Positions 9,054-60,430 of a DNA stretch of 64,000 nucleotides are shown in pieces. Source of the DNA: Nageia nagi (Eukaryota > Plantae > Pinophyta); NCBI GenBank assembly GCA_050084985.1, contig JBITNC010000001.1:94364001-94428000 (forward strand), written 5' to 3'. The notes below the pieces were generated by a model. The model was not told where the DNA came from. It ran no database searches and saw only the letters and a list, made by a program, of their open reading frames with translations. The translations under genes and the position numbers were made by a program. How positions within the stretch are numbered: the first letter of the stretch is position 1; the number at the start of each line of letters is the position of its first letter.

Positions 9054-9994
9054 TGATGCAAGAGCTATTGGAGATTCTATCAAAGGTTGATTCAATGAAA
9101 TAGGGCTTTTTTTGGGATCTAGGAGAAATTTTATAATTCTAGATTTTGGGATATCAAATTTGAATTTTGTTTGTTGCATTTGGAGAAGAGGATATTGCCT
9201 AAGGAAGAGATATGAGAAATTTAATTTTTAGTAAATTCAAGAAGAATTTCAAGAAACCATTTACATTTTTAGAATAGTTGCAAAAAATTAGCTAGGGTTG
9301 CTTCTTTGCACTTTTTAATTTAGTTTCATTTGGCCCTCCAAATATGAATTTGAATTTTCTGGTAAAAGCCCTAGATTTATAGTTTCTTATTTGAATTTTG
9401 AAATTTACACTTGACCATTGGAAGTTGAATACATGTTTTTCTATTAGAACTAAATGTTAGAAATAATTTTTTTTTTTGTTAATATTGGGGTGGTTTTTAG
9501 GGAACCAATAACCACTTTACATTGAAGGTAGTTTTGAATTTATCCCTTAACCTCCCAAGACACGAACCATAGTCCCTCAACTTGGAGGAGGGCCTGAACA
9601 CATTCGAAAATTGGAAAAATTACATCATTTCAAGACTTTTTACATATCTTAAGATAGGCATTAAAAACTTGTACACTTGCAACAAATATTCGAAACTACC
9701 TGGTCAAATTTGAATTTTGAAATTTAAACTTACCGCTTGAAGAGAAAGAAGCTATGAGCCTTGGAAGTTGGTTCCAAATCTTGGGTCTAACCTTCCAAAC
9801 TATCGGATAGGCTAGAAGATTCCAATTGTTGCTTGCTTCAGTCAAGTCATTAGTCCCTTCTTGCATCTTTCCTACTTCTGGGTCTAAAGCAACTTGACCA
9901 TCCCTCCAATGTGACCTCAAACCCTTGAGAGGATGGAATGTCAAAGGATTCCAACAAAGAAGCAACAAAGGATGCAACCATTGTACCTTCCTTC

Positions 9995-10475
9995 TATTGG
10001 ATTGTATAATGCATTATTGTAAAGGTTGTGTTAAATATTCTATGTAAATTCACTAATTCATAAGAGTATCATTTAATACCTTAAGTATTTTAGTGAATAT
10101 AATAATGTAACTTGTCCTACACTCTAAGTCATGAGCATGCTTCTTGGGTCAAAAATGTGCATGTCATGCTTAGGTAATCCAAAGGGGATTTTGGCTTATA
10201 AATAGAAGGCTCCCTCTTTGTAATTACACACAACAAAATTTGGAGTAAAGTTATGCTATAGGATAGAAGTGTAGGAGTTGGGATTAGGAGAATTGTAAGA
10301 GAGTTGTATTTGTGAGAGAAGTAAAGATCTAGTTAGTGGATGTACTCCTAGTTGAAGGAATCACTTTACATCTTGTGTTGTTAGATTGGTCTGTGTATTT
10401 GTTAGATATGAATTTGAGAGCTTTCATGAGATCTTGGTAGTTTAGGATTGTTCTTGTTATAGATCAATTCTTTCA
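9995..10475 (+). repeat. 5' LTR (481 bp)
   Basis: Ends T(A)TTGG...TTTCA; TATAAATA near 10197; matches 18429-18911. Confidence 0.95.
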
Positions 10476-10477
10476 AT

Positions 10478-10495
10478 TGGTATCAGAGCCAAGTT
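10478..10495 (+). promoter_or_regulatory. Primer-binding site, tRNA-iMet
   Basis: TGGTATCAGAGCCAAGTT, 2 nt after the LTR end; complementary to the 3' end of plant initiator tRNA-Met. Confidence 0.95.
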
Positions 10496-11411
10496 GGAAG
10501 CTCATCTTCACATTCTTGGTTTAGAAGCTCTTCTTCTTAGCTTGAACACTTTTCTTGTTGAGGTAAAACTATGCGAAGGTATAATATCCTTGCTTCTTGG
10601 TTATTGTTAAAGTATTGCATTTGGCTACTAACATGTTATTTTTATGTGTTAGTTCCTTTTTTTTTTGCAAAATATGCCTAACCAAGTTCAATTTTTGTTT
10701 CTAACCCCTTATGTTACTTGAATTTTTTTTTTTTTTTAAATTACTACCGTATTTTATTACAAATTGGGGTTAGTATATGCAATTTTGATTACAAAAAAAA
10801 ATGATATCACAAATTTGATACAATATTTTTTAAAGAATAATTTTTTTTTTTTTAAATATTGTTAGAAAGCATAAAAAGGAAAGGTTTATTGCTTTAATAT
10901 AAAAACATTGTTTTTCCTTACAATTTTTTTTTGCAAGTATAATTGTTACTATAGTTGAAGGGAGGAAGTTTAAACAAACAATATAATAATATTTTTTTAG
11001 TATTGTATGGGTGGCCTATATATTATATATATATCTTTTTTTTTACAAACAAAAAAAAAAAACAAAAAAGCTATGTTGGTGGTAGATTCCTCCGCCTAGC
11101 TCTTCCTCCCACCCTCCTCTATTAGCATCTGGAACTTACACATAGGGCAAGAACTCCATCTTCATTATTCCTTACTGCCAACCTTCCCCACCACCACGAA
11201 TCCTTGTCAACACCATTTGCCTAGATCACTCTCCTTTTCTCCACCCTTGACTCCTTATCTGTGCGCTTCCTCTCCCATCGATTGGATGTGTTATGCTGCA
11301 TGCCTTTGAGGATGTTGGTTCAAAGTTTATTTAGCTTTAGAATTTATTCCACCATTTGCCATATTTCTCTCTCCATTAGATTCCTTGGACACACGAGCTC
11401 TGTGGGTGAGT

Positions 11412-11830
11412 AAGCATGTCTATGTAGGAAATTTTTTAGGGACATGTCGATTCAACAACAGTCTTGGCTGCATCGATCACTTCATATCCCCTCACCGCAT
11501 TGGGGCCTAATGTCTTTTCCCCTATGAATGTCATTGTGTCATCCAATAGAATTGAACCATTGCAACCCTGAAATGCTCAGCAGTGTCAGATTTCTCCAAT
11601 GTTTTATCTAAGATGATAATGTTCATACATTGATGAAGCAGTTATGCAAGTGCATGCGAAGGAAGGATGCCACCATTTTGGTTTCATTGATGATTGCTTT
11701 CCTAACAACTACATGGATAATACTTATCATGTTTGGACATGAAGTGGCATAAAAACATTACCACTCAACTGCACTGTTGCCATTCCACATAGCCATATTG
11801 TTACGATGATGATTCTTACCCTATGGTCTT
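11412..11830 (-). pseudogene. Captured class III (secretory) peroxidase fragment: exon 1, 61-bp intron, most of exon 2
   Basis: Exon 1 (~11830 to 11629): hydrophobic signal-like peptide, then QLS..FYATSCPNMISII...ETKMVASFLRMHLHNCFIN. Intron GTATGA...TTTCAG (11628 to 11568). Exon 2 (11567 to 11412): [51 protein letters not shown]. The intron sits at the canonical FHDCFV(N)|GCD position. Confidence 0.92.
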
Positions 11831-13553
11831 GACCACCTTGGAGTTCGCCTTGTGTCCCTCACCAACACACCTTCCCACCATTCTCCCTCACCATCCATTC
11901 ACCTAGCTCTTGCCTTGGCTCCTCCCTCCCTCACAGCCTCTCTAGGCCTTGGACCAATGCAGCCATCGAGTACAGACCATTCACACCTCACATTTGTTTC
12001 TTTGGACTCTTTGCGTACGTTTGCTTTTTGTCCCTTTGACGAATGTATACCTTTTTTTTTTACATGAATACCTACCTAGTGCACTCCTTTTTCCATCCTA
12101 CACTACTTTTTCATACCTATTTTTTTTTAAAGGGATCTTGTGTTTTTAAGTCAAAAGGGGGCAAAGATGAGTATTTGACTTAAATTTTTGCATTTTTTAA
12201 AATCTTATGTCAAAGTATGGCATGCCTACGACTTTGACTTAGATCACTTAATTTTTTTTAAAACATGCTTAGAATTTTTTTTTTAAGTTAATAATTGCAT
12301 GCTTAGTCCAATTTTTTTAAGATAAAGATGTATTTTTTTACTTCAAAATTGTTAAATTTAAAAAGAGCATTTTTTTAACTTGAATGCATACTTTTAAGTT
12401 AAAGTAATGCATGTTTAAAATTAGTACTTATGTTTAATGCATACTTAGTACTTAATTTTTAAGATAAATGCTTATATTTTTTTTAAAAATGTATGCATGC
12501 TTAATACTTATTTGTTAAAATTAATAAATGCATGCTTAGTACTTAATTTTTTAAGTTAATGCTTAGGATTTAAAATTTTTGAAGATGCATGCTTATGATT
12601 TAAAAATGCATGATTATGCCTCTTAAATTCTAGTTCTTATGAAGAAATAATGCATACTTAATTTTTTGAATTGATGCATACTTCTTTAAGTTAATGATGC
12701 ATACTTATACTTATGGGATTGATGCATGTTTTTTTGCAAAGTTAATGGACTAATGCAAAATAAAGATTGATGTAAAGATGTCTTTTAGGGGTTAGTAAAC
12801 AAAACCCATTGGACATTTAGGGTTCAAGTTATGAATGAATGATGTTATATTTATGCTTTTTTTATTTCATATTTTGTACTTTGATTAATTTGTTTATGCA
12901 AATAAAAATGTAAATATTGATATGAGTAACCCTTTAAAATGAATTCATCCATACGTACATTCCGTAACATGACTTGTTTGAGGAGTCATGAGGAGAAGAT
13001 AGGTGGATTAGAGCCTTTAAGTTTGATGATCCAAGTGTTGAAAATTTTGTATTGCTTAATTGCCCTTAAGTCCTCTGTTGGTTTGGATTTAACTCCAATA
13101 AGTGGATAGGTATGTGTGTAGTGATACCACATTTCGCACATCCATTTAGAGATTATCTTGATAACCTAGGAGGACAACTTAAAACCTAATTAAGATTAAT
13201 AATTTGGTCGACCCAATCAATATCAAAACCTTGAAAAATAGCTCATACTTCTTGTGAGAGTATATTATTATCTAAGGGAAACTAGTTGAGAATTGGTAGT
13301 ATTTGGGCTCCTCTTATGTGAGCATCTAGGTGAAGGCTTAGTTTTTATATAAAAAAATAAACTTCAAAATGTCACTCTACATCTATAATTCTTGAGATGA
13401 GAAATATGTTTGGATACATATGTTATTATTTGAATTGTAAAATATTTGCACTTGTGAATCAAATTAAGCATGTATTTAGTGTTAAATGTAACATGTATTA
13501 TTTACTTGATTTATTGGAAATATATGTTTATTATTTCAATTTTTTTATAGCAA

Positions 13554-16500
13554 ATGGAAGAATCTTTTTTACCCAAACACATTCTTAATAGTTCCAACTA
13601 TGAGATTTGAGAACCTCATATGAAAGCTGAATTGTAGGCAAGGAAGCTATGGCAAATAGTGAATGAGAATCTTGTACCTCTTATAGATGAGAAGGCACTA
13701 GATGTTTATAACACAAAGAATAAGTTGGTAATATTCATATTTTACCATGCAGTTTTAGATGATGTGTTCTTAATGATATCCTCCTCAACCTTAGTAAAGA
13801 TGTATGGAATAAACTAAAGCAAATCTATCTTAGTTCAAACTTTTTAAGAAGATTTACCATTCTCTAAAAATTACTTCAATCTCATCAAAAGAAAGATGAA
13901 AATGTGGCTACCTATTTGAACAAAATCATTGACCTAAGGACCCAACTTATTGCTTATAGGTGCAATTGGATCAATGATGAGTTCATGGTCTTCATCATTC
14001 TTGAAAACCTCTCATCAAAGTTTAGAAACTTTGTAATAGTTATGAAAATAAGGTTTGATGATGAAAAAGAAGTTATCTCCCTTGAGAACCTTTCAAAGCA
14101 CCTATTGAAGTATGAGGAAACCCTTAATAATAAAGGGTTGATTTCTTTTCCTAAGGAGAATAACGTTGCTTTTGGAGCAACCAAAAATTCTTTTAAGAAG
14201 AAGTTCAATTATAAAAAAAAATCTTACCCTTCTTCCTCTAAAAGGTTTGAGAAAAGAGGCAATGGCTACTACAACAATAAGAATAATAAAAACAACAAAT
14301 ACAGTAGTAAGAATAATGGTAACAATAATCACTTCAAACACAAAGATGGAAAAGGCAAACCAAACACTCCTTATCCTAAAGAAAAGTTTAATGGCAATTA
14401 TAATTATTATGGCATACAAGGTCACAAAAAAATTGATTGTTACAAAAAAAAGGAGAAAAAATACAAAGGTAATGGAAATGTAAAAAACTATAATGGAAAA
14501 AAAAATACTCATGTCGATTTTGCTATGGCACTTTATGTCTTGCATCTTTTCATATGAATGGATTGTTAACTCTAGTTGCACTAATCACTTATGCTTTGAA
14601 AAAAGGAAGTTTACGAACTTTCACAAGTATAATATGGATGTAGTTATGATAGGTGATAAATTTACCTTTGAAGTCCAAGAAATTGGGAGTGTGCTAATTT
14701 ATGAAAAAGTTCTTGATAATATTCTTTATATTTCTAAGTTAAAGATGAACCTTCTCTATGTGATCCAAATTGTTAGAAAAGGGTACTCTTTTGAGTTCAA
14801 CTCTCAATCTTGGTGCATTAAAAAAGGACTTGCCACTTTGGTTAAAGGGCCTGTGAAAGATAACCTCTACATTATGGATCAAGTTCTATCAAAGATGTGT
14901 CTTACTTCTAATGTGTGTTTTAAAGATAATATTTGGCACCATCATTTAGGGCATCTTGACCATAAGAGTATTCAAGTCATGAAAACCCAAGAACTTGTGA
15001 AAAATTTCCCTTCAATTTTTCTTTCGATTAGTCTATGCGAGAAGTGCTTTTTTGGTAAGATGCATAAATAAAAGTTTGAAAAAAATAAGGTAATAATAGC
15101 ATCTCAACTCTTTCAACTTGTGCATTCAGATTTGATAGGTACATTTTAAACTAAGTCACTTAGAGAAGCATCTTACATCTTGACTTTCATTGATGACTTT
15201 AGTAGGATGACCTTTAGGTATCTTCTTAAGCACAATCCTTGAGCACAAAGATCAAACTTTTAAGAGTTTTAAGGTTCTTAAGGCCTTTGTTGAGAATTAA
15301 AGTAATTTTAAAATCAAAATATTGAGATTAGATAATGGGAGAGAGTATAACAATAATGAGTTCAATGACTATTATGTTAAGTATGGCATCAAAAGAAGTT
15401 TACAATTCTATACACTCCTCAACAGAATAATGTTGTTGAACAAAAAAATAGAACAATCATGGAGATGGCTAGATGCATGTTGAGTAATCTTCCTAAGTTC
15501 TTGTGGGGTGAAGCTGTGAGCATTGTAATTTACACCTTGAATAGGTGTCCAAAAAAGCTATTTAGAGTAAAACTCCTTTTGAGGCATGGTTAAGAATAAA
15601 ACCTAACATTTCTCACTTTAGTGTGTTTAGTTGTGAAGCTTTCTCCTACATTATTTTTGAGAAAAGGAAGAAGTTGGATCAAAGAGCTAACAAATGTATC
15701 TTTATGGGTTATGATAATCAACATACAGGATTTAGGCTTTACTCTTCAACCTATAAAGCAATATTCATTTTAAGGGATGTAAAGTTCAATGAACTTCATG
15801 CAGAATCTACTTCTAATGAGAATGATGATGATTTAAAGAACTCTTCAGTTGCTCCTATCTGGTTGGATATTAATGTAGATAAGTCATTATAAGAATAAAA
15901 TTTTTCAACACAAAAGGTAACAAGGAATATGAATTTGAACAAATACTTAATTATCAAGATTGACAACAACTATGAGCCCTTAACTTTCAAAGAAGCTTCT
16001 AAGCACAGTGCTAGATAAAAGCCATGAAAGTGGAGTATGAGGTGCTTATGAAAAATCAAACTTGGGACTTGATTCTTTATCCCAATGATAAGAACATGAT
16101 TGTAATAAGTGGATCTATAAGGTTAAGTTCAATTCAGTTGGAGATATTAAGAAATACAAGGCAAAGTTAGTAGTTAAATGTTTTGTTCAAAAATACGATG
16201 TAAATTATGAAGAAACCTTTACTCCCATGGCAAAGATCCTATTGTGAGAGTTCTTCTTGCTCTTTCTGTAGCTTAAATATGAAAAGTTTTTCAACTTAAC
16301 GTCAAGAGTGCATTTCTCAATAGTGAATTAGATGTGAAAATATTCATGAATCAAAAAGAAGGGTTAATTATGGAAGGCAAAGAGTCTTTTGTGTGCAAGC
16401 TAAAATTTGTTTTGTATGGATTTAAGCAAGCACTTCGAGCTTGGTATAGAAAGATTTCAAGGTACTTTGCAAACATTGGATTCTTCAAGTATTTTTTAAC

Positions 16501-17510
16501 TCTGATCTATATGTGCTTAATCAAGGATAAGATGTGGTCTTGATTCTCCTTTATGTGGATGATCTTTTAATTAATAGGACAATGATGCAATTGTTCAAGA
16601 ATGCATATCCAAACTTAAGACAATATTTGAAATGATTGATCTTAGTCTCTTGCATTACTATCTTATAATGCAAATGTACTAATATAAGGATTGTACTTAC
16701 CTCAATCAATCTAAGTATATATAAGACATCTTGCAAAAATTTAGAATGGAGGAGTGTAGATATGCTATAATCCCCATCTCTCTTAGCATCACTATTTTTG
16801 TAAGCTCCAACTCTCAGTTAATTGATGCTATAGTTTATAAGCAATTAATTGGTAGTCTTTTGTATTTGACTATCTCTCAGTCAGATATTGCCTTTGTAGT
16901 GAATTTGATGGCATAATTCATGTAAAAATCTTATATTGAGCATCTCAATGCTGTTAAACATATTTTGTGATATGTTGCAAGGATTAAGGATCTTGCTCTC
17001 AAGTATTCCAAGTTGCCCTCTATTGTTCTCTTTGGATTCTCAAATTTTGACTATGGAGAAGATCACAATGATAGGAAGTCAACCTTTATGTATGTGTTTA
17101 GCATTGGTTTAGGTGCTATCTCTTAGGCTTCTAAGAAGTAACCTACTATTTCTCTTTCCATCACAAAAGTTGAATATCATGCCATGTCTATTGCAACCTA
17201 GGAAGCCATTTGGCTAAGGCATCTTTTGAAAGAAATTAGGTATGAGCAAGATGGCTCATCCTTGATCTGTTTTGATAATTAGTTAGTTAGTTCTTTGGTT
17301 AAAAATTCAGTGTTCCATCAAAAAAAAAACATGTGAAAATCCATACCTATTTTGTTAGGAAGAAGGTTCTTGATGGCATCATACACCTAGAGTAATGTCC
17401 ATCCACCTTAAACTCCACTAATTTGTTCACCAAGCCCCTTTTACAAGCTCAATTATGTAAGCTCAGGGATGCTATTGGGTTGATGAAGTTGCCTTCAAGG
17501 GAAGGTGAAG
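13554..17510 (+). pseudogene. Disrupted copia gag-pol polyprotein
   Basis: ATG at 13554 (MEESFLPKHILNSSNYEI*), knuckle remnant YYGIQGHKKIDC, protease WIVNSSCTNH, WHHHLGH, LVHSDL and TFIDDFSR (integrase), YVDDLL (RT), RNase H. Many stops and frameshifts. Confidence 0.92.
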
Positions 17511-17649
17511 TTTGAATTCTTGTGTTGAATTCATATTTGTGATGATAACTTCACCCTTAGAAGGATTTTATGCTGTATAGTGTTGATTTTATTGTACACC
17601 TTCATGGTAAGTTTGCTCTGCATAAAGAACTTGTAAGTATTGGCCACTC

Positions 17650-17990
17650 TAGCACTATTTAGTTATCTATATGTGAGGAACTCTTATGTGTCTTTTGACA
17701 CTGTTTAATTATCCATATGTAAGGAACTCGTATGTGCATACTCTATTTTTTAATCAATTTTGCACTATTTAGTTATCTATATGTGAGGAACTCTTATGTG
17801 TCTTTTGGCATTGTTCAATTATCCATATGTGAAGAATTTTTGTGTATACTCTATTTTTTGGTCAATCTTGCACTGGTTAGTTATCCATGTGTGAGGAACT
17901 CTTATGTGTTTTTTGGCACTATTTAGTTATCCATGTGAGGAATTTTTATGTCTTTTAGCATCATTTAATTATCCACATGTGAGAGACTTG
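17650..17990 (+). repeat. 3'-UTR tandem array of ~48-62-bp units
   Basis: Repeats of GCACTATTTAGTTATCYATATGTGAGGAACTCTTATGTG; also present at 59770-59980 in the sibling copy. Confidence 0.9.
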
Positions 17991-18416
17991 TTTTATATAC
18001 AACAGATGACTATATGTTTTTGGCATAGCATCTTCGTGATGACTTATAGTGCACTATTGATCAGTTCATGATGGCATTTATGTGATTCATCTATCCTTAT
18101 TGATATGAATATGATGCATCTAACTGATCTTATTATTCGAGCTACTTATGACTTACAGGTTCTTTTAAGATTGCAAGTTGCTTACCTCAAGTATGCAGGC
18201 TCTTGGAGACTCTTCATGACTTCTAGTTGGATGATTACTTCTTATACATTGAAACTAGTTATGATTAATGATTATATTTGGCAAAGTAGTGAGTCTTAAA
18301 CTAGATCTTTCTTTCTTTAAAAATATGTAAAAAGTTCTCATCTCTATTGTATCTATTTGGAGAACTCTCTTCTTTTCTCTTCTTCTTCTCTCTTACTCAC
18401 TCTATCTTAATATTGC

Positions 18417-18428
18417 ATGAAAGGGGAG
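18417..18428 (+). promoter_or_regulatory. Polypurine tract
   Basis: ATGAAAGGGGAG immediately before the 3' LTR start TGTTGG. Confidence 0.9.
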
Positions 18429-18911
18429 TGTTGGAATGTATAATGCATTATTGTAAAGGTTGTATTAAGTCTTCTATGTAAATTCATTAATATTTAAGAG
18501 TATCATTTAATACCTTAAAGTATTTTAGTGAATATAATAATGTAACTTGTCCTACACTCCAAGTTATGAGCATGCCCCTTGAGTCAAAGATGTGCATGTC
18601 ATGCCTAGGTAATCCAAAGAGAGATTTTGGCCTATAAATAAAAAGCTCACTCTTTGTAATTACACACAACAAAGTTTGGAGTAAAGTTATGCTATAGGAT
18701 AAAAGTGTAGGAGTTGAGATTAAGAGAATTGTAAGAGAGTTGTATTTGTGAGAAAAGTAAAGATCTAGTTAGTGGATGGACTTTTAGTTGAAGAAACCAC
18801 TTTACATCTTGTGTTATGAGATTACTTTATGTATTTTTTGGATGTGAATTTGAGAGCTTTCATGAGATCTTGGTAGTTTAGGATTGTTCTTGTTATAGAT
18901 CAATTCTTTCA
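18429..18911 (+). repeat. 3' LTR (483 bp)
   Basis: TGTTGG...TTTCA, followed by the TSD CCTTC. Confidence 0.95.
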
Positions 18912-19784
18912 CCTTCTTGAGGGATGGAACTCCTATACTCGTAGGTTCAAGACCCATCAAAATAGAGAAGAATAGGTTGCTTGAAGAAAGTTGAGTCTTT
19001 AGAACATCCCAAGGATAGAAGAAATTACAAACAACATCCATGCCATTCAAATCCAACCTCCCTGACAAGACTAGAGCACCTAAAATTTTGAGCAACACAT
19101 GATTTCTAGCTTCCTAGTTGAAATCAACCCTCTGCTCTTCCATAAATTGAAACTCATCCAATCGAAAACCTCTTTTTTCCTCAATAGGTAATAGGGGATC
19201 AATACAAAATAAATCTTCTATCTCTATTGGCATGAATCTAGAACCCATGGAAAAGTCCATTGGGATTTTAGGACCTAGATACAGATCCATCCAAAAAAGT
19301 GCTTCCTCCTTCATAGGAGAGAACCATGATTTAAGGGAGAAATTAGAGATAACCTCTTCAATGCTAGCTAGACCCAAAAAATCTAGCTCTTCAACATAAA
19401 CTAAACCACAAAGAGGCTTCTCCTCTGGACCCACTTCTTGCTCTTTGGCCTTGGGAATACTGAAACCCACAAACCTTCCCTTTTTGTCTTGACCAATGGT
19501 GTCCACATCACTCTTTGCATCCTTCTCTACTTAGAAAACCCTCCCTCCCTTCTAGAACCCTAATCTTCAATAGCACTAAGCACTCATGAACCTCCTCCAC
19601 TCCCAACATTACCTCTTCTCACCTTTTCCTTAGCACTCACATCGCTAGGCCTAGAAGAGCTCAACCCTAAAACTAACACTCACCCTGATCGAAGCTCCAT
19701 CAAAACAAAAGTGAGATAGCAATGGTCACTTAATGTTAGAAATAGCTTAAATGTAGTTAACAATGGTGATTTACAACAACCAAT

Positions 19785-20442: not shown

Positions 20443-23400
20443 TTTTTTTTTGAAAAAAATAGTTTTTATTAATAATAAAGTGGTGTTTTTGAAAGGCTCC
20501 ATTAACCTTGTACATCAATAAGGATGGGAAGTATTGTCTCATGCTTATATCTAAACTGAAAGATTTAAAAAAATAGGAGGAATCCTAAACAGAGGCATCT
20601 CTTAAAATTTAACATCTCCATCAAGAGGTATCCTCCTCAAAATTTCTATCTAACTACTTGCTATCAAAACCAACCATTATGACTTCTTAACATTAGACAA
20701 GAGGAGTTCTCCTTGCCTCTTGAGTCTTTCTACTTAAATTATTGGCCTCTGAAATCAAGAATTGATTGAGAGTCATTGGTTATGTTTACCTTTATTTTTA
20801 AGGAACTCCTCTGCTATTTTGATAGGTTTCCCACTCTTCATTCTTTCCCAAGGTCCATCCTTATTTTTTGCATGTTTCTGTTGTGAACACCCCATGAAGA
20901 AGCTTCCCTCATATGTTTCTTTTTGAGGAAAGATGTCTTCATGAAGTGTTGATTCTTTCTGCAAGATTTTTCATCATCATCATCTAAACACTTCTAGAGG
21001 ATGCTACTCCACATATAAATCTTTGGTCTTTCCTTGAGTAGTCCTCAAAAAATTTGGATTGATAGGGCTTACCATATCTCATTTGGTCTACAGAGCTAGG
21101 CATCTTGCTAAGGTTTGTCCATAATGTTCCAAATTTTGATAAGTCATATAAAAGGCTTAACCTTTGCCATAGGTCTTGGATTGTCGATTATAGAGCATCT
21201 TGTATCAAACATTTTGAGAGGTTACACAACATGGTTTCGTCAAGAGATGAAAGAGATATTGTATTTTGAAGTTCTCTCCCTAACCAAATTTCTACAGTCA
21301 TGTCTGCATAAATTTACAATATTTCCCATTAATGGGGAGTGCTTTACGTGATGTCCCTCTCCTAGGGATATGAATTAGTAATTAATTGTATATAAGAGAA
21401 AGCTATGTAATTAGGAGTTTTTATGTACTTTTTTGTGATAATGAATTATAAATATTAATTAAAAAGATCTCAAGATAGGAGACTAATGGGTCCAAGGGAC
21501 CAATTATGATCCCCAATGTGGGATGTTTTCCTCCTTGAGCTAGTTAGGATTGTTTACTAGTATTTAAATGTATTTCTTTCATTATATTTGATTGTTGGGA
21601 TCATGAGGAGTGATTGTTGATATCTTGAGGATCTTATGGATGAGATTCTTAGCTTTGCATGGTTCTTATGTGAAATCTAGGAACTTAGCTATATAAGAGA
21701 ATGATGCATCATTGAGGAGACATCTTGGTTATTCATTCATCTACCTCTTAGACTTGGTTGCCAACCATTGCCAACTGCTAGATCAAGTAGCCTCATCAAG
21801 TTCTATGTGCCCTAAGGAGGATCAGAAGCCTCATCAAGCTTTTGTACCCTCAATGGACCCTCATTAAGCTCTTGCCAAACCTTATGAAGATTTACAACAT
21901 TCAAATCCAAGAGATAGTAGCCCTAGCAATGTGACATCATCCTTTGGGAGTGATTTGGAGCCTCATCAAGCTCTTCATGCCCTAAGGAGGATTAAAAGCC
22001 CCATTAAACTTTTGTGCCCTCGATGAAACCTCATTAAGCTCCTGCCAAACCTTGTGAAGATTTACAACATTTAAATTCGAGAGATAAGAGTCCTAACTGT
22101 GTGATGTCAACCTTTGGGAGTGACTTGGAGAATCAAATTTGGCTAGTAAGCCAAATGTCTAGCCCTTTGGGCCATAATTTTTCCATTCTTGTGTCTTAGG
22201 AGAGTTTGTCTAGCCCAAGAGGCCACATTGGACTCTTGTTTGAGCATTGTACTTGATCTTAAGAAATAACTATTTTAGATTTGGTTTCTTCGCATCCATG
22301 TTTTATTATTTTCTTGAGTTTCTTGATGAAATTTGCATAAATCCCTAATTTTTATAATTTGGAACATTACAAACGACATCAAAGCTTGGATCTTTCCAAG
22401 CTATGAGGATGGAGAAGAGAAGATTAAAGGAGGATCATAAGATTGATGGCTTGCTGAATGTCTTGACAAAATTGCTTGGAGATGGGGATCAAGGAGAATC
22501 TTCAAAACAAGTAATGTCTATATCTCAACAACAATGATCCACCATGCATGAAAATTCAATATGGAGTACAAATCTTTGATGATTTCAATTAGTGAATATT
22601 GGACCATTTTGACCACCAATATGAGAATGAGTTCTTTGGAGATTTGATTGCATTAAGGCAAAGGGATTCACTAGAGGCCTACATTGAAGAATTTTAGGTG
22701 ATTGTAGTGATGGTAAGCAATATATCTAGCAAGAGCATGACATTGTTTCTCATGGAAGGATTGCTTGAGCTATTGAAGGGGATGGTTAAGACTCTTGCAC
22801 CCACATCTCTCCAAGGTGCCATCGAGGGAGCTTTAATGTTGGAGCCAACACTCATGAGATTTATATCTACCTCTTCACCTAGATCTAGGTTATTTGAGGC
22901 TACACATGGCTCAAAGGAGAGTTTGTCCCACTATGGAAGACAACATTTATCTTAAGTAGGGGAGAAAATGATAAGGAGAGAGGAACTATCATTACAAGAA
23001 AAGAGAGAAGAGAAAATGATAGGGGAGAAAAGTGAGGAATGACCAAATCTAAGGAAAGAAAACATAAAGTATTCCTTTGTGACTGATTTTGAAGAAATCA
23101 AATTAGATATGGTGAAGGAAGAAGTTGCCTAGCCACATAAAGGGAGTTATCTTACCTTTGTATCAAGAATTAAGTAAATAAGAGCTTGAGATTCATAAAA
23201 GACTATAACCATGGGGCCTAATTATGATGAAGGAGATCCAAACTTATGTATAGGTTTGGAACTAGATCTAGATCCCACTACAGATTCAGATCCAAATCCA
23301 AATTTGGGAGGATAGAGCTCATTTATGTGGTTACAAAAAGTTTTACAAAGAAACCTAAGTATACATAAAGCCTTAGGAAGGTTCATCCATGCCCTAGGGC

Positions 23401-38200: not shown

Positions 38201-38445
38201 GGAGTGCATAGTCAGACAGATTGTGAGAGACCTTGCCTCTGACTATGTTTACTTAATATGTTTCTTTGTTCAACTATTTATTTCATTTTAGGGTTTAACC
38301 CCTATATTGTTCTTATAATTTTCATAGTTTGCTTTGAGTGAGGGCCTTTGAGCCCCTCATGCTGCTTTAGACTTGTATACCCTTTAGTCTCATTGACCAC
38401 TTTTGGTCATCTATGGATAGTAATATAATTTCTTTCTTTGTTTCT
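35265..38445 (+). mobile_element. 5'-truncated RTE-like LINE (EN, RT, C-terminal Cys/His motif)
   Basis: DFNG, IHPILKSGDPCDLSNYHTIMIGH, CFVDFRKDFD, LSLTLFNLYIDE, PILLFVDDIVL, RVFSHQIRIE...C.LC...H.IFWC; TTTC-rich 3' end. Confidence 0.88.
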
Positions 38446-52625: not shown

Positions 52626-52626
52626 A

Positions 52627-52880
52627 GAAGGTACACATTTCTTCATTCTTGATTATTTGTTGGATTAATTGATACTAACATATATGATATGTGTGATATG
52701 TGTTCATTTTTTTGTAAATTTGGTGAAAATAGTATTATGATGCATTTCTATACATACATACATACATATATGTGTGGTGTGCACTAACTTCTTGTATTAT
52801 TTGCAATTTTTTTTTAAAAAAATTTGCTTACCTTTTTTTTTAGAAGTTAGTATACAAAAGTGCAAGTTTTTATACATTTC

Positions 52881-52915
<35 letters not shown>

Positions 52916-55900
52916 TTTTTTTCCCTAAATAAAAAAGGGGGTTTATATTTTACTAGTCTATTAAAAAAAGGGGGGGGGAGAGTTAGTATACAATATTGCA
53001 ATTTGTTTCAATTATGTTTTAAATTTTTTTTACTAACTCAAAATAAAAAAGGAAGAGATTATTCTTTCAAAAAATAAAAAATAATTTTTTTTTGGTAAAT
53101 TTATTTTGAATTTATTTTAATACATTAAATGGGGGGGAGATTTACACTTAAAATATTATGTTGAAACTAATTTTTTTCTAAAAATAAAAAAATAAAAATG
53201 TTTCAAGGGGTGGCCTCTTTAGCACTTAGATCCATCCCCCCCCTTCTGGTTGCACCCCTAGTGCTCCTCTTGCCACTAAACTCCTCCTATTAGACTCTAT
53301 GCTCTTCACTCCTCAACCCTTATCAATCAAGCCATGCAAGAGAGGGGGCGTTCTTGTTGTTTGACCTCTTGCACAATGTTTAACCTCTTGCATAATGTTT
53401 AACCTCTTCTATTTGCGACATCTCCTGAACGTAGCCTTATCCTATTTCTTGCTTCCTCTATCTATTCATGACATCTCCTCAACATTGTCTTCTTCCATTT
53501 CATGCTTCCTTTGTTTGTTCATGACATCTCCTTAATGTCATCTTCTTCCATTTCATGCTTCCTTTATCTGCTCATGATGTCTCTCAAACACCACCTCTTC
53601 TTGCCCTCATGGTCCCTTTCACTCACTGTGGCATTGCTTGAGACATGGATGCCATCTTCTTAGACTATTTGAATATTCAAATGCTTTACAACTCTTTGAA
53701 CTAGGATGCGATCACTTTAAAATTTAGGGGAAGAATATATGTAGAAAGAACATGCAAGCAAGTGAGCTCATCTGATATAGTTGTTCAAATACCATGTTGT
53801 TGGGAGGCCCTTTGGTCTTTTTTTTAGAATTGAGTTTTAGATCATCCAAAAGGTGTGAGTCTCCAACATATAGAATCTATGGTAGTTGCCCCCCCTAGCC
53901 TCATTGCTCCTCCACCTACATTGCGAGCTATCTCTCCCAAGCTCCTTGGCACCTCTATCATGTATAATCACCCTTATCCCCCCTTGACTTGTTTAAATAA
54001 AATAAATGCTTCTTTTGTTACTATTTGTGCATTAAATTATTTGTGATTACTTTCACTAAATGCACCTGCAAAACCAACATATACTCTTTCTTAGTAAGGG
54101 AAGGGTGGCCATCACTTTTTATCTAAATGCATTTATTTAAGAAGAAGTACTCAATCATGAATAGCCTCTGCATTCTTTTTCCTTGGAGTGCTTGAGGTAA
54201 AATGGCATTAAAATTATTTGAATTTTTTCTCTCAAGTACTAGTAGAAGCATGATAGCTTATTAAACACTTACTTATTTAAATGGAGAAAATCAATTTTTT
54301 AAAGTAGCCACTTTTTAATGCCTATAATTACAGTTTTTAAAATGCTTATTATTGGCATTAATGCTTAGCATTTTTTTAGTTAAAATTCTAAGTAAAATAG
54401 CATGTTATCTTTAGGATAAATCTTTTTTAAGTAAAAGAGGGGGAAAATTGCATATTTCTTTTACTTAATTTTTTACTATAGCATGCATGTTACATAAAAT
54501 ATTTCATTTCTATCTATTTTTTTAACTTATGATAATGCATGCTTCTTAATTTTTTTTCCTTTTTCCCATGCATGTTAAGTATTTTTTACAAAGTGATAGA
54601 TAAATGCAAACTAAGTTAATAATCCATGCCTAAGGCTTAAAATTTTTAAGTCAATGCTTAGTACTTAGAAGTTAAATGCATGCTTAATACTTCAATTTTT
54701 TAAGTTAAATGGTGTATTTATTTACTTAAAAATTGTTAAGTTAAAAAGTCATTACTTAAATGCATACTTTTAAGATAAAATGATGTATGCTTATACTTAG
54801 TATTTAAATTTTAAGTAAATGATGCAATTTAATTCTTTTTACAAAAGATTGAACTTGTGCAAAAATAGGAATGATGTAAAGATGTCCTTAAGGGGTTGGT
54901 AAACAAAAGCCATTTGACACTAAGGTTTCATTTTTTTTGAATGGATGATGTTTACTTATGCTCTTTTACTTTATGTTTCATATTTTGATTTATTTTCTTA
55001 TCCAAAAAAAATGCAAATATTGAAATGAGCAACCCTTTAAAATGAACATATCTGCATGTACATTCTGCAACATGACTTGTTTGGTGAGCCATGAGGTGAG
55101 AACAGGTGGACTAGAGCTTTTAAGTTCAATGATCCAAATGGTAATAAATTTGTACTTTTCAATTACCTTTAAGTCCTTTGTTGGTCTAGATTTAGCTCCA
55201 ATAGGTGGATAGGTATGTGTGTAGTGATACTACATATTCATACATCCATTTAGGATTATCTTGATAATCTAGGAGGATAACTTGAAACTTAATCAAGATT
55301 AATAATTTGGTCGATCTAATAAATATTAGAACCTTAAAAAATAGCTAGTACTTCTCCTTATGAGAGTATATTACTACCCAAGGGAAATTGATTGAGGATT
55401 GGTAGGACCTGAGCTCCTCTTATATGGGCATCCAAGTGAAGGCCTAATTTTAGATAAGAAAATAAACCTCAATAATGTCACTCTACATCTATGATTCTTG
55501 AAATAGAAAATATATTTGGATACATGGGTTATTATTTGAATTGTAAAATATTTGCATTTGTGAGTCAAATTAAGCATGTCCCTAGTGTTAAATGTAACAT
55601 GTATTATTTACTTGGTTAAAACTTAATATTTAATATTATTTATTGAACCATATGCTCATTATTTAATATTTTTGTATAGAAAATAGAAAAATCTTTTTCA
55701 CTCAAACACATTCTTAATGGTTTCAACTATAGGATTTGGAAACCATGGATGAGAGTTGAATTACAAGCAAAGAAGCTTTGGCAAATAGTAAATAAAAATC
55801 TTGTACTCTTATAAATGAAAAGGCACTAAAAGTTTACAACATGAAAATGAGTTTGCAACCTTCATGATTTATTGTGTAATTTCAAATGATGTGCTCTTAA

Positions 55901-58900
55901 TGATTTTCTCTTTAACCTTAATAAAAGAAGCTTGGGATAAGCTTAAGCAAATCTACTTGGGTTCAAATTTTTCAAGAAGATTTACCATTCTTTAAAAATT
56001 ACTTTAATCTCATCAAAGGGAAGATGAAAATGTTACCATCTACTTAAACAAAATTATTTACCTAAGGACCTAACTTGTTGCTTATGAATGCAATTGAATC
56101 AATGACGAGTTCATGGTCTTCATCATTCTTCAAAACTTTTCTTCAAAGTTTGAAAACTTTGTAATGGTTATAGAAATAAGGCTTGATGATAAAAAAATCT
56201 TCTCCTTTGAGAACCTTTTTAGGTACCTATTGATGCATGAGAAAACCCTTAATAATAAGGTGTTGATTTCTTCTCTCAAGGATAATAATATTACTCTTGA
56301 AGTAATCAAAACTCTTTTCAAGAAGTTTAACCATAAAAAGAAAACTTATCCTTCTTTCTCTAAAAGGTTTGAGAAAAGAGGTAATGGTTACAATAGTAGT
56401 AAGAACAACAAAAACAACAACCATAGCAGTAGAAATAATACTAACAATAACCATTTCAAGCAAAAAGATGGAAAAGGTAAAGAAAACATTCCTTATCCTA
56501 AAAAAAAATTTTATGGTAATTGTAACTATTATGGCATCCAAGGTTATAAAGAAGTTGATTATTTCAAAAAGAAAAGAGAAGAAAAGTACAAAGGTAATGG
56601 AAATGTAAAAAATTATAAAGGAAAAAAGAATATTCATGCTAGTTTTGCTATGATACTCTACTCCATATCTCATATTTTTTTATCTAAATGGATTGTTGAT
56701 TTTGGTTGCACTAATCACCTATGCTTTGAAAAGAAAAAGTTTGAAAACTTTCATAAGTACAAAAAAATACGATTATGATAGGTGATGACTCCACCTTCAA
56801 ATTCCAAAGAATTGGAAGTGTGTTGATTCATAGAAAGGTTCTTAAAAATATTCTCTATGTTCTTAAGTTAAAAATAAACTTTCTCTTCATGATCCAAGTT
56901 GTTAGAAAAGGGTACTCTTTTAAGTTCAACTCTCAATCTTAGTGCATTAAGAAAGGACTTACCACGTTGGTTAAAGGATCTATGAAAGATAACCTTTACA
57001 TTATGGATTAAATTCCATAAAAGATGTATCTTACTTTTAGTGTGTTCTAGAGGTAATCTTTGACACCATCATTTAGGGCATCTTAACCATAAGAGTATTC
57101 AAGTTATGAAAGACCAATAATTTATATAAGGTTTGCCTTTAATTTCTCCTTCAGTTGGTCTATGCGAGAAGTGCATTCTTAGCAAGATGCATAGATAAAA
57201 ATTTGAAAAAGATAAGGTAACAAGAGCATCTCAACCTTTTCAACTTATGCATTCAGATTTGATGGGTTTATTTTAGACTAAGTTACTTAGAGGAGCATCT
57301 TATATCTTAATCTTCATTGATAACTTTAGTAGGATGACCTTTGGATATTTACTTGAGTATAAAGATCAAACCTTTGAGAGTCTTAAAATTTTTAAGGCCT
57401 TTATTGAGAATCAAACTAACCTTAAAATTAAGATGTTGAGATTAGATAATGGGAAACAATATAACAATAATGAGTTTAATGATTATTGTACTAAGTATAT
57501 AATCAAGAGGTAGTTTATGATTCTTTACACTCCTTTACATAATGTTGTTATTGAAAAAAAAAAATAGAATAATTATAGAGATAGCTAGATGCATGTTAGG
57601 TAATCTTCTTAAATTCTTGTGAGGTGAAACTATAAGCATAACTATTTACACCTTGAATAGGTGCCCTACAAAAACCATTTAGAGTAAAACTCCTTTTGAG
57701 GCATGGTCAAGAAGAAAACCTAACATTTCTTATCTTAAAGTGTTTGGTTGTGAAGCATTCTCTTACATTATTTCTGAGAAAAGAAAGAAGTTAAAAAAAA
57801 GAGTTAAAAAATGTATCTTTGTAGGTTATGATAGTTAGCATAGAGGCTATACGCTCTACTCTCCATCTTACAAAGCTGTGTTTATTTCAAGGGATGTAAA
57901 GTTTAATGAACTTCTTAATATTCCACTTCTAAAGAGGATGATGATGATCCAAAGGACTCTTTAGTTGCTCCTAAATGGTTGGATATTGATGTATATAAGT
58001 CACCTCAGAAGTAAAATTCTCTAACACAAAGGGTAACAAGGAGCATGACCTTGAACAAATCCTTAATTATCAAGATTGATAATAAGCATGAGCCCTCGAC
58101 CTTCAAAGAAGCTTCTAAGCACAAGTGCTAGATGGAAGCCATGAAAGTAAAGTATGAAGTGCTTATAAAAAATAAAACTTGGAACTTGGTTCCTTATCCT
58201 AATGAAAATAATATGATTGGTAATAAATGGATCTACAAGGTTAAGTTCAATTCAATTGAAGATATTAATAAATACAAGGTAAGGTTAGTAGCTAAAGGTT
58301 TTTGCTCAGAAATACGATGTAGATTTGAGAAAACCTTTACTCTCATGTAAATATGCCTATTATGAGAGTTATCCTTGCTCTTTCTATAGCTCAAGAATGG
58401 AAAGTTTTTGAACTTGACTTCAAGAGTGCATTTCTTAATGGTGACTTAGATGTGAAATTCTTCATGAATAAATCAGAAGGGTTTATTGTGAAAGGTAAAG
58501 AGTCCTTTATGTGTAAGCTAAAAAAATCATTGTATGGAATCAAGTAAGCACCTAAAGCTTGGTATAAAAAGATTTTAGGGTACTTTATAGACATTAGATT
58601 CTTTAAGTATTTTTCTAACTCTAATCTATATGTGCTCAATCAAAGAAAAAATGTGGTATTGATTTTCTTTTATGTGGATGATCTTTTGATTATTAGGAAT
58701 AAGGATGAAATCATTCAAGAGTGCATATCCAAATTTAAGGTAATATTTGAAATGATTGATCTTGATCTTTTGCACTACTATCTTGGAATGCAAGTGTATC
58801 AATACAAGGATTGTACTTACCTCATTCAATCTAAGTATATATCAAACATCTTATAGAAATTTGGAATGGAGTGTAGATATGCTACAATTTCAATCTCTTC

Positions 58901-60430
58901 TAAAATTATTATTTCTCTGAGCTCTAATTCTTAGTTAGCTGATGCTACAACTTACAAGTAATTAATTGGTAGCCTTTGTATTTGACTATATCCAAGCTAG
59001 ATATTACCTTTGCAGTGAATCTGATAGCACAATTTATGCAAAAACCATATGTTGAACATCTCAATGCTGTTAAGCAAATCTTAAGGTATGTTTCAAAGAT
59101 TAAGAATCTTGCTTTCAAGTATTTTAAGTTACCCTCATTTGTTCTCTCAAGATTCTCATATTCTAACTATGGGGGAGATAGAGATAATAAGAAATCAACT
59201 TTTGCATATGTGTTTAACATTGGTTTAGGTGCTATCTCTTAGGATTCTAAGAAGTAACCTACTATTTCTCTTTCCACCATAGAAGCTGAATATCATGTCA
59301 TGTCTATTACAGCCTAAGAAACCATTTAGCTAAGGTATCTTTTGAAAGAAATTAGGTATGAGTAAGGTGGTTTATCTTTGATCTCTTCAAATAATCAATT
59401 AGCTATTTCTTTGGTTAAGAATGTTGTGTTCCATTAGAGAATAAAATATGTAGAAATCCATGCCCATTTTATCAAGGAGAAGATTCTTGATGGCATCATA
59501 CACCTAGAGTATTATTCATCCATCTTAAAATTTGTTGATTTGTTCATCAAGCCCCTTCCAAAAGCTCAGTTCTGTAAGCTTAAGGATGCTATTAGGTTGG
59601 TGAAGTTACCCTCAAGGAGGAGTGAAGTTTGAATTCTTGTGTTGAATTCATATTTATGATTACAACTTCACCCGAAGAGGATTTTATGCTATATAGTGTT
59701 GATTTTATTTTACACCTTCATGGTAAGTTCGCTCTGCATGAGGAACTTATTGTACAAATTGGCCAATCTAGCACTATTCAGTTATCCATATATCAAGAAC
59801 TCTTATGTGTCTTTTGGCACTATTCAATTATCCATATGTGAGGAACTCGTATGTGCATGCTCTATTTTTGATCAATTTAGCACTATTCAGTTATCCATGT
59901 ATGAGAAACTCTTATGTGTCTTTTGGCACTGTTAAGTTATCCATATGTGAGGAGCTCATGTGTGTATGTGCTATTTTGTAATGATAATCAACATATGTTT
60001 TATATTCAACAAGTGATTATAAATTTTTGGTATGGCATCTTCATGATGACTTATAGTGCACCATTGATCAGTTCATGATAGCATTTGTGTGATTCATATA
60101 TCATTGATGAGATGAATATGTTGCATCTAATTGATCTTATTATTCAAGCTATTTATGACCTGCAAGTTCTTTTGAGATTGTAGGTTACTTACCTCAAGTA
60201 TGTAGGCTCTTGGAGACTTTTCATGACTTCTAGTTGGATGACTACTTCATGTACATTGAAATCAGTTATGGTTAATGATTGTATTTGGCAAAGTAATGAG
60301 TCTCAAATTAGATATTTCTTACTTTAAAAATATGTAAAAATTTCTCATCTCCATTATATCTGTTTGAAGGAGAACTCTCTTACTTTCTCTTCTTCTTATC
60401 TCTTATTCACTCTATCCCAATAACATATGA
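52627..60430 (+). mobile_element. LTR-less internal copy of the 9995-18911 copia family
   Basis: Colinear homology with the first copy from 10575 to ~18420 (leader ends, gag-pol at 55683-59625, 3' UTR repeats). Lacks LTRs, PBS and PPT. Confidence 0.92.
53410..53620. repeat. ~53-bp tandem repeat, about 4 copies, within the variable leader
   Basis: Units resembling CATGACATCTCCT.AA...TCTTCTTCCATTTCATGCTTCCTTT. Confidence 0.8.

What the first reader, a model, noticed from the sequence alone, without database searches (positions are those of the whole stretch)
11080..12100. Copia family with a swappable 'cargo slot' carrying an antisense, intron-retaining peroxidase gene fragment
Seen: between the PBS and gag of an otherwise canonical copia lies class III peroxidase exon 1, an intact GT-AG 61-bp intron and exon 2 (11830 to 11412). 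It is antisense to the element and bracketed by C-rich tracts. The sibling copy (52627-60430) shares the leader start and the leader 3' half but has unrelated sequence between similar C-rich flanks (53210-54050). Known: gene capture by LTR elements is usually of spliced mRNA, whereas intron-retaining capture is the hallmark of Pack-MULE, Helitron and CACTA elements. Inference: this family behaves as a 'Pack-copia' with a dedicated variable slot. Antisense orientation would protect the host intron from splicing during retrotransposition, and element transcripts could produce antisense RNA or siRNA against the parent peroxidase.
Basis: partly seen in the sequence, partly recalled or inferred. 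Interest (0 to 1): 0.88.

Follow-up and report, generated by a model that had tools for sequence, protein, structure and literature searches.

The report
Peroxidase gene scrap inside copia intron
An old, dead copia retrotransposon of a plant carries a broken, backwards piece of a peroxidase gene inside a 3-kb intron of its leader. This looks like a one-off passenger in a fast-changing stretch of that intron, not proof of a gene-carrying "cargo slot".

Summary
Element e1 (9995-18911, LTRs 91.5% alike, TSD CCTTC) carries peroxidase exon 1, a 61-nt GT-AG intron and exon 2 on the minus strand at about 11355-11825. It lies between two C-rich tracts, and the sibling e2 has different sequence there.

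The fragment is a pseudogene with two stops and one frameshift. It sits in the core of a 2,972-nt spliceosomal leader intron (10579-13550). Donor and acceptor are conserved in related copies fetched from metagenome contigs, and one copy (L039) lacks the intron to the nucleotide.

In 15 leaders only the intron ends are shared. Nearly every core holds a C-rich island that cannot be aligned between copies and often contains minisatellites.

Peroxidase occurs only in e1 (484 kb searched). No other island gave a Pfam hit. No TIR, TSD or Helitron end bounds the fragment.

"Pack-copia" is therefore only partly supported: the variable zone is real, but recurrent host cargo and mobilisation of this fragment are not shown. 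Most likely this is a single old insertion into unconstrained intron sequence.

The scan had already noted this leader intron, here and in two other windows of this genome. It also noted a Helitron with the same peroxidase parts.

The parts
9990..9994 (.). Target-site duplication CCTTC, 5' copy
   Evidence: Identical to 18912-18916.
9995..10475 (+). 5' LTR of e1
   Evidence: 481-nt alignment at 91.5% identity to the 3' LTR. Ends read.
10478..10489 (+). Primer-binding site TGGTATCAGAGC (tRNA-Met type)
   Evidence: The same motif occurs in 7 related loci.
10476..10578 (+). Leader exon, ending ...GCGAAG before the splice donor
   Evidence: Alignment A4. Conserved TTGAGGTAAAA..GAAG|GTATAA.
10579..13550 (+). 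Leader intron, 2,972 nt, running from GTATAA to TTTTTTTATAG
   Evidence: Donor and acceptor conserved in all copies. The intron-less copy L039 joins the two exons exactly.
11080..11300 (+). Left C-rich tract of the island
   Evidence: C 36%, G 13%. Comparable islands occur in nearly all family leaders.
11355..11567 (-). Peroxidase exon 2 remnant. Homology is clear over 11412-11567 and weak down to 11355. Stop at 11436-11438.
11568..11628 (-). Peroxidase intron 1, 61 nt, GT..AG on the minus strand
   Evidence: It lies between residues 47 and 48 of the 1sch numbering.
11629..11825 (-). Peroxidase exon 1 remnant. The mature part FYATSCP..HLHNCFIN is 11629-11754. A stop lies at 11758-11760. A signal-peptide-like part lies at about 11761-11825 in another frame.
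11826..12040 (+). Right C-rich tract of the island
   Evidence: C 38%, G 14%.
12041..12753 (+). AT-rich part of the intron with ATGCATGCTTA-type minisatellites
   Evidence: Patchy similarity to e2 and other copies.
12754..13550 (+). Conserved 3' part of the intron
   Evidence: 75-84% identical to all other copies.
13555..17700 (+). Degenerate gag-pol. The end coordinate is approximate.
   Evidence: Retrotran_gag_2, Pol_BBD, gag_pre-integrs, SH3_retrovirus and RVT_2, in that order. Many stops.
18429..18911 (+). 3' LTR of e1, preceded by a polypurine tract at 18416-18428
18912..18916 (.). Target-site duplication CCTTC, 3' copy
52631..55679 (+). Leader intron of the sibling e2. Its island is 53210-53990, with a 53-nt tandem array at 53403-53577.
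55681..60430 (+). Degenerate gag-pol and 3' region of e2, without LTRs

Best explanation
e1 is an old, dead Ty1/copia element whose leader holds a 2,972-nt spliceosomal intron. Across the family only the intron's first ~100 nt and last ~0.8-1.4 kb are conserved. The core is under little constraint and turns over quickly. It is built around a G-poor, C-rich island that is prone to minisatellites.

In e1 this island is split by about 0.5 kb copied from the 5' end of a class III peroxidase gene: signal peptide and exon 1, intron 1, and exon 2. The piece lies backwards and is decayed.

The most likely history is a single DNA-level event. Either a gene scrap was copied in during break repair, or this is the remnant of some other carrier. 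The event happened in e1 itself or in its direct progenitor. The insert was tolerated because this part of the intron is removed from the mRNA that is translated.

Shown: the anatomy, the intron, the family-wide variable core, the uniqueness of the peroxidase piece, and the absence of transposon ends.

Inferred: the mode and time of insertion, and that it has no function.
For: Single insertion with a perfect 5-bp TSD and matching LTRs.

The intron is real. The donor GAAG|GTATAA and the acceptor TGTAG|CAAATGG are conserved in 7-17 copies. L039 joins them exactly, with PBS-to-gag only about 110 nt.

The core differs in all 15 leaders, even between copies that are 88-89% alike in the conserved part.

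The islands have the same composition everywhere. Six of them hold tandem arrays of 19-67-nt units. A few pairs keep faint ~100-nt similarity above shuffled controls. So the island belongs to the family and is not cargo.

The non-C-rich gap in e1's island (11301-11825) is filled almost entirely by the peroxidase homology at 11355-11825.

Peroxidase is found nowhere else in the window or in the 55 loci. No other island has a Pfam hit.

No TIR, TSD or Helitron terminus was found.

Decay of the piece: 5 of 24 conserved residues changed in exon 2, plus 2 stops and 1 frameshift. This is similar to e1's own gag, which has 8.6% private changes at family-conserved sites. The piece is therefore old, not a recent addition.
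Against: Whether the piece arrived before or after e1 integrated cannot be told without the rest of the genome.

The related copies come from metagenome contigs of an unidentified plant and are only about 80% like e1. Close siblings of e1 that might share the fragment were therefore not sampled.

Pfam on stop-free ORFs cannot see captured promoters, UTRs, introns or badly decayed exons, so other islands could still hold unrecognised host DNA.

A note from the same scan (s1-846275, unchecked) reports the same gene parts inside a Helitron 42.9 Mb away. That hints at a carrier or at a shared source.
Confidence: 0.55

Rival explanations
1. Pack-copia. The family uses the leader core as a dedicated slot. 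Host fragments are picked up there repeatedly, kept antisense so that their introns survive, and spread by retrotransposition.
For: The core differs in every copy between conserved ends. It lies in a spliced intron, so cargo costs nothing. The antisense orientation of the one known cargo fits. The fragment is about as decayed as the element and has no transposon ends of its own.
Against: Only 1 of 15 leaders has recognisable host sequence. The cores share composition, tandem arrays and faint similarity, as expected of an intrinsic hypervariable region. No second copy of the peroxidase cargo is known. With one case, no orientation bias can be claimed.
Confidence: 0.15
2. Later nested insertion. 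A DNA transposon that had captured the peroxidase 5' end landed in e1's leader, and its ends have since been lost. A Helitron is the first suspect, as one is noted elsewhere in this genome.
For: Intron-retaining fragments are typical of DNA-level capture. The scan note s1-846275 lists a Helitron with peroxidase promoter, exon 1, intron and exon 2 in the same genome. That note is unchecked and I could not read its sequence.
Against: No hairpin plus CTRR end, no 5' TC-type end, and no TIR or TSD beyond chance. At most about 55 nt on one side (11301-11354) and none on the other are neither peroxidase nor C-rich tract. That leaves no room for carrier sequence.
Confidence: 0.15
3. RNA-level capture. 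Reverse transcriptase switched templates onto a co-packaged antisense or unspliced transcript of the peroxidase locus, then switched back.
For: Template switching is the accepted route for chimeric LTR elements (PMC13317346, PMC5131818). The fragment has no DNA-transposon ends.
Against: It needs an antisense transcript covering exon 2 to exon 1. [quoted passage not shown] No sibling copy is known.
Confidence: 0.08
4. Artefact. Two truncated elements flank a piece of host DNA, or the region is a mis-assembly, so the fragment is not really inside one element.
For: The sibling e2 is such a composite: it has no LTRs and is joined to another copia's integrase.
Against: e1 has a perfect 5-bp TSD and a matching LTR pair. 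The leader architecture around the fragment is that of the whole family.
Confidence: 0.02

Closest known systems
Bs1 of maize and other LTR retrotransposons with transduced host gene fragments (PMC13317346, PMC7264820, PMC3726574)
   Same: A host gene fragment sits inside the internal region of an LTR retrotransposon. It is not a full ORF.
   Different: [quoted passage not shown] From memory, not checked in the papers read here, the Bs1 fragments are also intron-less. Here the piece is antisense, keeps its intron, sits in a leader intron, and is known from one copy only.
Pack-MULE, Pack-CACTA and Helitron gene capture
   Same: The captured gene piece retains its intron and covers the 5' end.
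   Different: Those are DNA transposons with TIRs and TSDs, or with a 5' TC start and a hairpin plus CTRR end. None of these bounds the fragment. The carrier here is a retrotransposon.
LTR-mediated retroposition by template switching (PMC5131818)
   Same: Host sequence ends up between LTR-element sequences.
   Different: Those copies are described as retrocopies made through an RNA intermediate (abstract of PMC5131818). That they are spliced and in sense is my reading of the paper from memory. This piece is unspliced and antisense.
Reverse-oriented, intron-containing cassettes in retroviral and lentiviral vectors (own knowledge, not checked here)
   Same: The principle is the same: an intron survives an RNA genome only if it lies antisense to it.
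   Different: Those are engineered. Here nothing shows that the piece ever went through an RNA cycle.
Spliced LTR-element RNAs: the BARE and Drosophila copia gag-only mRNAs, the Ogre intron, retroviral leader splice donors (PMC3735527; otherwise own knowledge)
   Same: The element RNA is spliced for expression while the unspliced RNA is copied.
   Different: Here the intron is a 2.3-3.5 kb leader intron that ends 4 nt before the gag ATG. My two searches of the paper library found no description of such an intron.
Antisense additional ORFs of Grande, RIRE2 and Retand (PMC7264820)
   Same: Antisense sequence of non-element appearance lies inside a plant LTR element.
   Different: [quoted passage not shown] This piece is upstream of gag, is in one copy, and is clearly host-derived.

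Membership tests
Ty1/copia LTR retrotransposon (carrier e1) | Pair of LTRs with TG..CA ends, flanked by a 5-bp target-site duplication | tested here: met
   LTRs 9995-10475 and 18429-18911 are 91.5% alike. The 3' LTR runs TG..CA. The 5' LTR starts TA, a changed TG. TSD is CCTTC/CCTTC.
Ty1/copia LTR retrotransposon (carrier e1) | PBS next to the 5' LTR and a polypurine tract before the 3' LTR | tested here: met
   TGGTATCAGAGC at 10478; GCATGAAAGGGGAG at 18416-18428.
Ty1/copia LTR retrotransposon (carrier e1) | Domain order gag, protease, integrase, reverse transcriptase | tested here: met
   Retrotran_gag_2, Pol_BBD, gag_pre-integrs, SH3_retrovirus, then RVT_2. RNase H was not looked for. The frame is broken many times.
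Class III plant peroxidase gene (PF00141) | N-terminal motifs FYxxSCP, RLHFHDCF and GCDxS, in order | tested here: met
   FYATSCP, RMHLHNCF and GCNGS are present. PDB matches have E 1e-9 and 2e-12; HMM scores are 62.5 and 34.3 bits.
Class III plant peroxidase gene (PF00141) | First classical intron between the distal-His motif and GCD | tested here: met
   A 61-nt GT-AG intron lies between residues 47 and 48. Three introns at conserved positions are the classical pattern (PMC6627342). The exact place of intron 1 is from my own knowledge.
Class III plant peroxidase gene (PF00141) | Complete open reading frame including the proximal-His half | tested here: not met
   Homology stops at about residue 110-115. 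There is no exon 3 or 4. There are two stops, one frameshift and a two-codon gap.
   15 leaders were examined and only e1 has a recognisable gene piece. Sensitivity is limited to protein-coding remnants.
   None was found in 484 kb, in the scan's index, or in the protein collection. The source genome itself could not be searched.
Nested Helitron, MULE, hAT or CACTA insertion | Own termini (TIRs, or a 5' TC start and a hairpin plus CTRR end) and a TSD at the fragment's borders | tested here: not met
   The best inverted repeat (13 nt) and the best direct repeat are at chance level.
Spliceosomal intron (leader 10579-13550) | GT..AG ends conserved across copies | tested here: met
Spliceosomal intron (leader 10579-13550) | Evidence of precise removal | tested here: met
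   L039 has LTR, PBS, the leader exon and then CAAATGGGAG (gag), with the intron missing to the nucleotide. This is DNA evidence of a reverse-transcribed spliced RNA.
Spliceosomal intron (leader 10579-13550) | Spliced transcripts observed | not testable with these tools

The most novel reading that the evidence does not exclude
This copia family uses its 2-3.5 kb spliced leader intron as a neutral cargo bay. Sequence placed in the intron core is removed from the translated mRNA but copied with the unspliced genomic RNA. The element could then carry and spread foreign DNA, including intron-containing host gene pieces lying antisense. The peroxidase piece would be the first recognisable example, and the unalignable C-rich cores would be older cargo.
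Probability: 0.2. Interest if true: 0.7.

Novelty: new variant of a known kind. Interest (0 to 1): 0.4.

Why it matters
Host gene pieces inside LTR retrotransposons are known. [quoted passage not shown] An antisense piece that keeps its intron, inside a retrotransposon, is unusual.

The context found here makes it understandable. A large leader intron has an unconstrained core, and this is a place where a retroelement could carry passengers at no cost. If a genome-wide census showed the same piece in several insertions, it would show a route for retrotransposons to spread unspliced gene fragments.

As it stands, this is one old, decayed passenger in one dead copy. The more solid result is the spliced leader intron with its hypervariable core.

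Tried and rejected
Tools that failed.
They were, however, contained in whole-intron or whole-window comparisons in local scripts on the closed machine.
- The look-up of sequencing runs: the best holder has only 0.11 of the words, and no RNA run was found.
I used the search for related loci on metagenome contigs instead.
- The search for homologous proteins with the exon 2 piece gave no candidate in the allowed length range. This says nothing about longer relatives.

Step left out. The spliced (joined) peroxidase model was never built. The exons were searched one by one by reference.

Ideas rejected.
- A peroxidase remnant in e2 ('SHLLDD..KT.GP' at 53790-53858, minus strand): 16 of 200 shuffles score as well, and there is no nucleotide similarity to e1.
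- Direct repeats flanking the e1 insert (11086-11120 against 11893-11934): the best local alignment of the two tracts is no better than 10 of 500 shuffles.
- The inverted repeat 11141-11153 / 11813-11825: it is 13 nt long, which is chance level.
- A LINE-type retrocopy: there is no poly(A) trace at the fragment's 3' end.
- A parent peroxidase gene inside the window: none.
- The search of earlier findings by sequence was blank.
Full report
WHAT IS THERE

The window holds a structurally complete but dead Ty1/copia element, e1.
- Its LTRs are 9995-10475 and 18429-18911. They are 91.5% alike over 481 nt.
- It is flanked by a perfect 5-bp target-site duplication, CCTTC at 9990-9994 and at 18912-18916.
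- A tRNA-Met-type primer-binding site follows the 5' LTR at 10478. A polypurine tract precedes the 3' LTR.
- The broken reading frames give Retrotran_gag_2, Pol_BBD, gag_pre-integrs, SH3_retrovirus and RVT_2, in copia order.
- The gag ATG is at 13555, so the leader is about 3.1 kb long.

THE PEROXIDASE PIECE

I searched the two exon pieces separately by reference. The joined, spliced model was deliberately not built.
- Minus-strand 11629-11757 matches peanut peroxidase 1sch residues 6-46 (E 1.3e-9).
- Minus-strand 11439-11567 matches residues 48-92 (E 2e-12).
- Pfam PF00141 agrees.
- A peroxidase HMM built from 170 library hits scores 62.5 and 34.3 bits on six-frame translations.
- The 61 bases between the pieces (11568-11628) start GT and end AG on the minus strand. 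They lie where the first of the three classical introns of class III peroxidase genes lies. The three conserved introns are documented in PMC6627342. The exact place of intron 1 is from my own knowledge.

With full-length library peroxidases, tblastn shows how far the homology extends.
- It runs clearly from 11754 to 11412 and weakly on to about 11355.
- Upstream there is a signal-peptide-like stretch (..IIIVTIWLCGMATVQLSGN) up to about 11825. It is in a neighbouring frame, which implies a 1-nt frameshift.
- There is no exon 3 or 4, and no other peroxidase sequence in the window.

The piece is a pseudogene.
- It has stops at 11758-11760 and 11436-11438, the frameshift, and a two-codon gap.
- It has changes in conserved residues: HFHDCF has become HLHNCF, GCD has become GCN, and VSCADIL has become ISYIDML.
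- Five of 24 columns that are at least 90% conserved are changed in exon 2.

THE FLANKS

THE SIBLING

e2 matches e1 from 54858 to 60416 at 82%, and for roughly 100 nt after a shared GAAG|GTA motif at 52631. In between there is no similarity, by blastn, by nhmmer or by targeted alignment.

e2 has no LTRs and no PBS. Its leader abuts a fragment that aligns with the integrase region of copia elements, and that fragment belongs to a different family.

A faint peroxidase-like peptide on e2's minus strand (53790-53858) is not significant: 16 of 200 shuffles score as well, and there is no nucleotide similarity to e1.

MORE COPIES OF THE FAMILY

I therefore aligned the gag of e1 and e2 with protein hits and scanned JGI metagenome contigs. 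This gave 55 loci of the same family, about 80% identical to e1 in gag, the LTRs and the 3' leader. After removing duplicates, 13 of them cover all or much of the leader.

THE LEADER IS AN INTRON

- In every copy that has a PBS, a donor GAAG|GTATAA lies about 100 nt downstream of it.
- Every copy has the acceptor (T)GTAG|CAAATGGGAGAATCC, 4 nt before the gag ATG.
- Locus L039 has LTR, PBS and the leader exon, followed directly by CAAATGGGAG. The whole 2.3-3.5 kb is missing to the nucleotide. That is what a reverse-transcribed spliced RNA would leave.
- In e1 the intron is 10579-13550.

This agrees with another first-reader note on this window (s1-846655) and with two notes on other windows of this genome. 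I tested it here with independent copies.

THE CORE OF THE INTRON

All-against-all comparison of the 15 leaders shows that only the last 0.8-1.4 kb is shared by all, and the first ~100 nt (385 nt in one pair) by some. The 1.3-2.5 kb in between is unique to each copy. It matches nothing else in 484 kb. This holds even between copies that are 88-89% alike in the conserved part.

Yet the layout is the same nearly everywhere: an AT-rich stretch, a 0.3-0.9 kb island of 40-55% GC that is rich in C and poor in G on the element's sense strand, another AT-rich stretch, then the conserved part.
- Six islands contain tandem arrays of 19-67-nt units.
- Five of 45 island pairs keep a ~100-nt similarity that beats composition-matched shuffles. 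Most pairs do not.

I read the island as a hypervariable part of the family that is prone to minisatellites, not as foreign cargo.

IS THERE CARGO ELSEWHERE?

I scanned 96 stop-free ORFs of at least 40 residues, from the GC-rich cores of 14 leaders, against Pfam. Only the two e1 peroxidase pieces hit; the other six families had E above 0.006. The peroxidase HMMs find only e1 in the window plus all loci. So one of 15 leaders has a recognisable host-gene piece. This test cannot see non-coding or badly decayed cargo.

HOW DID THE PIECE GET THERE?

A two-element chimera is excluded by the TSD.

A nested DNA transposon is unlikely.
- No TIR or TSD beyond chance was found.
- No hairpin plus CTRR end and no 5' Helitron-like end was found on either strand.
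- At most about 55 nt on one side (11301-11354) and none on the other are neither peroxidase nor C-rich tract.

There is no poly(A) trace either.

The piece is about as decayed as e1 itself. e1's gag has 8.6% private changes at sites conserved in the family. The peroxidase residues suggest roughly 10% nucleotide change, with a wide margin (my estimate). So it is not a recent addition from a working gene. It entered around the time of integration, or before, or it came from a copy that was already decayed.

Whether it was ever copied through RNA cannot be told. No sibling with the piece was found, but the true close relatives of e1 are in a genome I could not search. Three attempts failed or came back blank:
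- the exon 2 protein search;
- the scan's sequence index.

One lead remains. The scan holds an unchecked note (s1-846275) of a Helitron 42.9 Mb further on in the same genome that carries peroxidase promoter, exon 1, intron and exon 2. These are the same gene parts. I could not read that sequence. The comparison is the most decisive next step.

COMPARISON WITH WHAT IS KNOWN

LTR elements with host gene pieces are known, for example Bs1 and the genome surveys of rice and sorghum (PMC13317346, PMC3726574). [quoted passage not shown] The capture review PMC13317346 never uses the words intron or antisense.

Intron-retaining capture is the mark of Pack-MULEs, Pack-CACTAs and Helitrons, whose defining ends are absent here.

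The logic that an antisense intron survives an RNA genome is familiar from reverse-oriented vector cassettes (own knowledge).

I found no paper describing a multi-kilobase leader intron in a plant copia. This was a limited library search.

VERDICT

The 'Pack-copia' reading is only partly supported.

Best explanation (0.55): a single old DNA-level insertion of a peroxidase 5' fragment into the unconstrained, fast-evolving core of a spliced leader intron, tolerated because that core is spliced out.

Rivals:
- a true cargo slot (0.15);
- an eroded nested carrier such as a Helitron (0.15);
- template switching onto an antisense transcript (0.08);
- an artefact (0.02).

Interest is moderate. The piece itself is one decayed passenger. 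The intron context is the more notable result, and it makes the cargo idea testable.

HANDLING NOTES

No letters of them went to any public search afterwards. They were part of whole-intron or whole-window comparisons in local scripts only.

Noticed in passing
window 10579-13550; L039:1709-1870; loci L012, L015, L016, L032, L043, L048, L054: The copia family has a 2.3-3.5 kb leader intron with a conserved donor GAAG|GTATAA and acceptor TGTAG|CAAATGG. One copy (L039) lacks it exactly, which suggests a reverse-transcribed spliced RNA.
   Followed up: yes
window 12754-13550 and the last ~800 nt of the intron in all loci: The 3' part of the intron is as conserved as the coding region (75-89% between copies), although it is non-coding and spliced out. 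A packaging, dimerisation or promoter role is possible but untested.
   Followed up: partly
window 10630-10652 and the same place in the loci (alignment A4): A TACTAAC(AT) branch-point-like motif followed by a T-run and TAG is conserved about 55-75 nt after the donor. A short alternative intron may exist.
   Followed up: no
window 52497-52631, 60416-60430, 44597-45119, 61762-62455: e2 has no LTRs. Its 5' end is joined, about 10 nt before the donor, to an integrase fragment of a different copia. A 75-81% direct-repeat pair at 44.6 kb and 61.8 kb may be the LTRs of an outer element, so e2 may be part of a recombinant or nested composite.
   Followed up: partly
window 17631-17968 and 59750-59978: There are tandem repeats of about 110 nt between pol and the 3' LTR in both e1 and e2.
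   Followed up: no
window 12493-12727; e2 54300-54800: AT-rich minisatellites of ATGCATGCTTA-type units (21-35 nt) lie upstream of the conserved 3' part of the intron. They are shared in patches between copies.
   Followed up: partly
window 35278-38444 against 46792-50057 (inverted); 21197-22342 against 25465-26428 (direct): Two further repeat pairs point to other transposable elements. One is an inverted pair at 76-80% identity. The other is a direct pair at 78-82% with 170-nt tandem units.
   Followed up: no
L048:4480-4751 against L047:8960-9231 (minus strand): Part of one copy's variable core recurs inverted at 92% identity about 9.6 kb away on the overlapping contig. The core is therefore inherited between close copies even though it cannot be aligned between distant ones.
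   Followed up: no
L054:4170-4303 and L026:7523-7668: Some intron cores hold very GC-rich tandem arrays (19-nt and 37-nt units, up to 60-70% GC) inside an otherwise roughly 20% GC intron.
   Followed up: no
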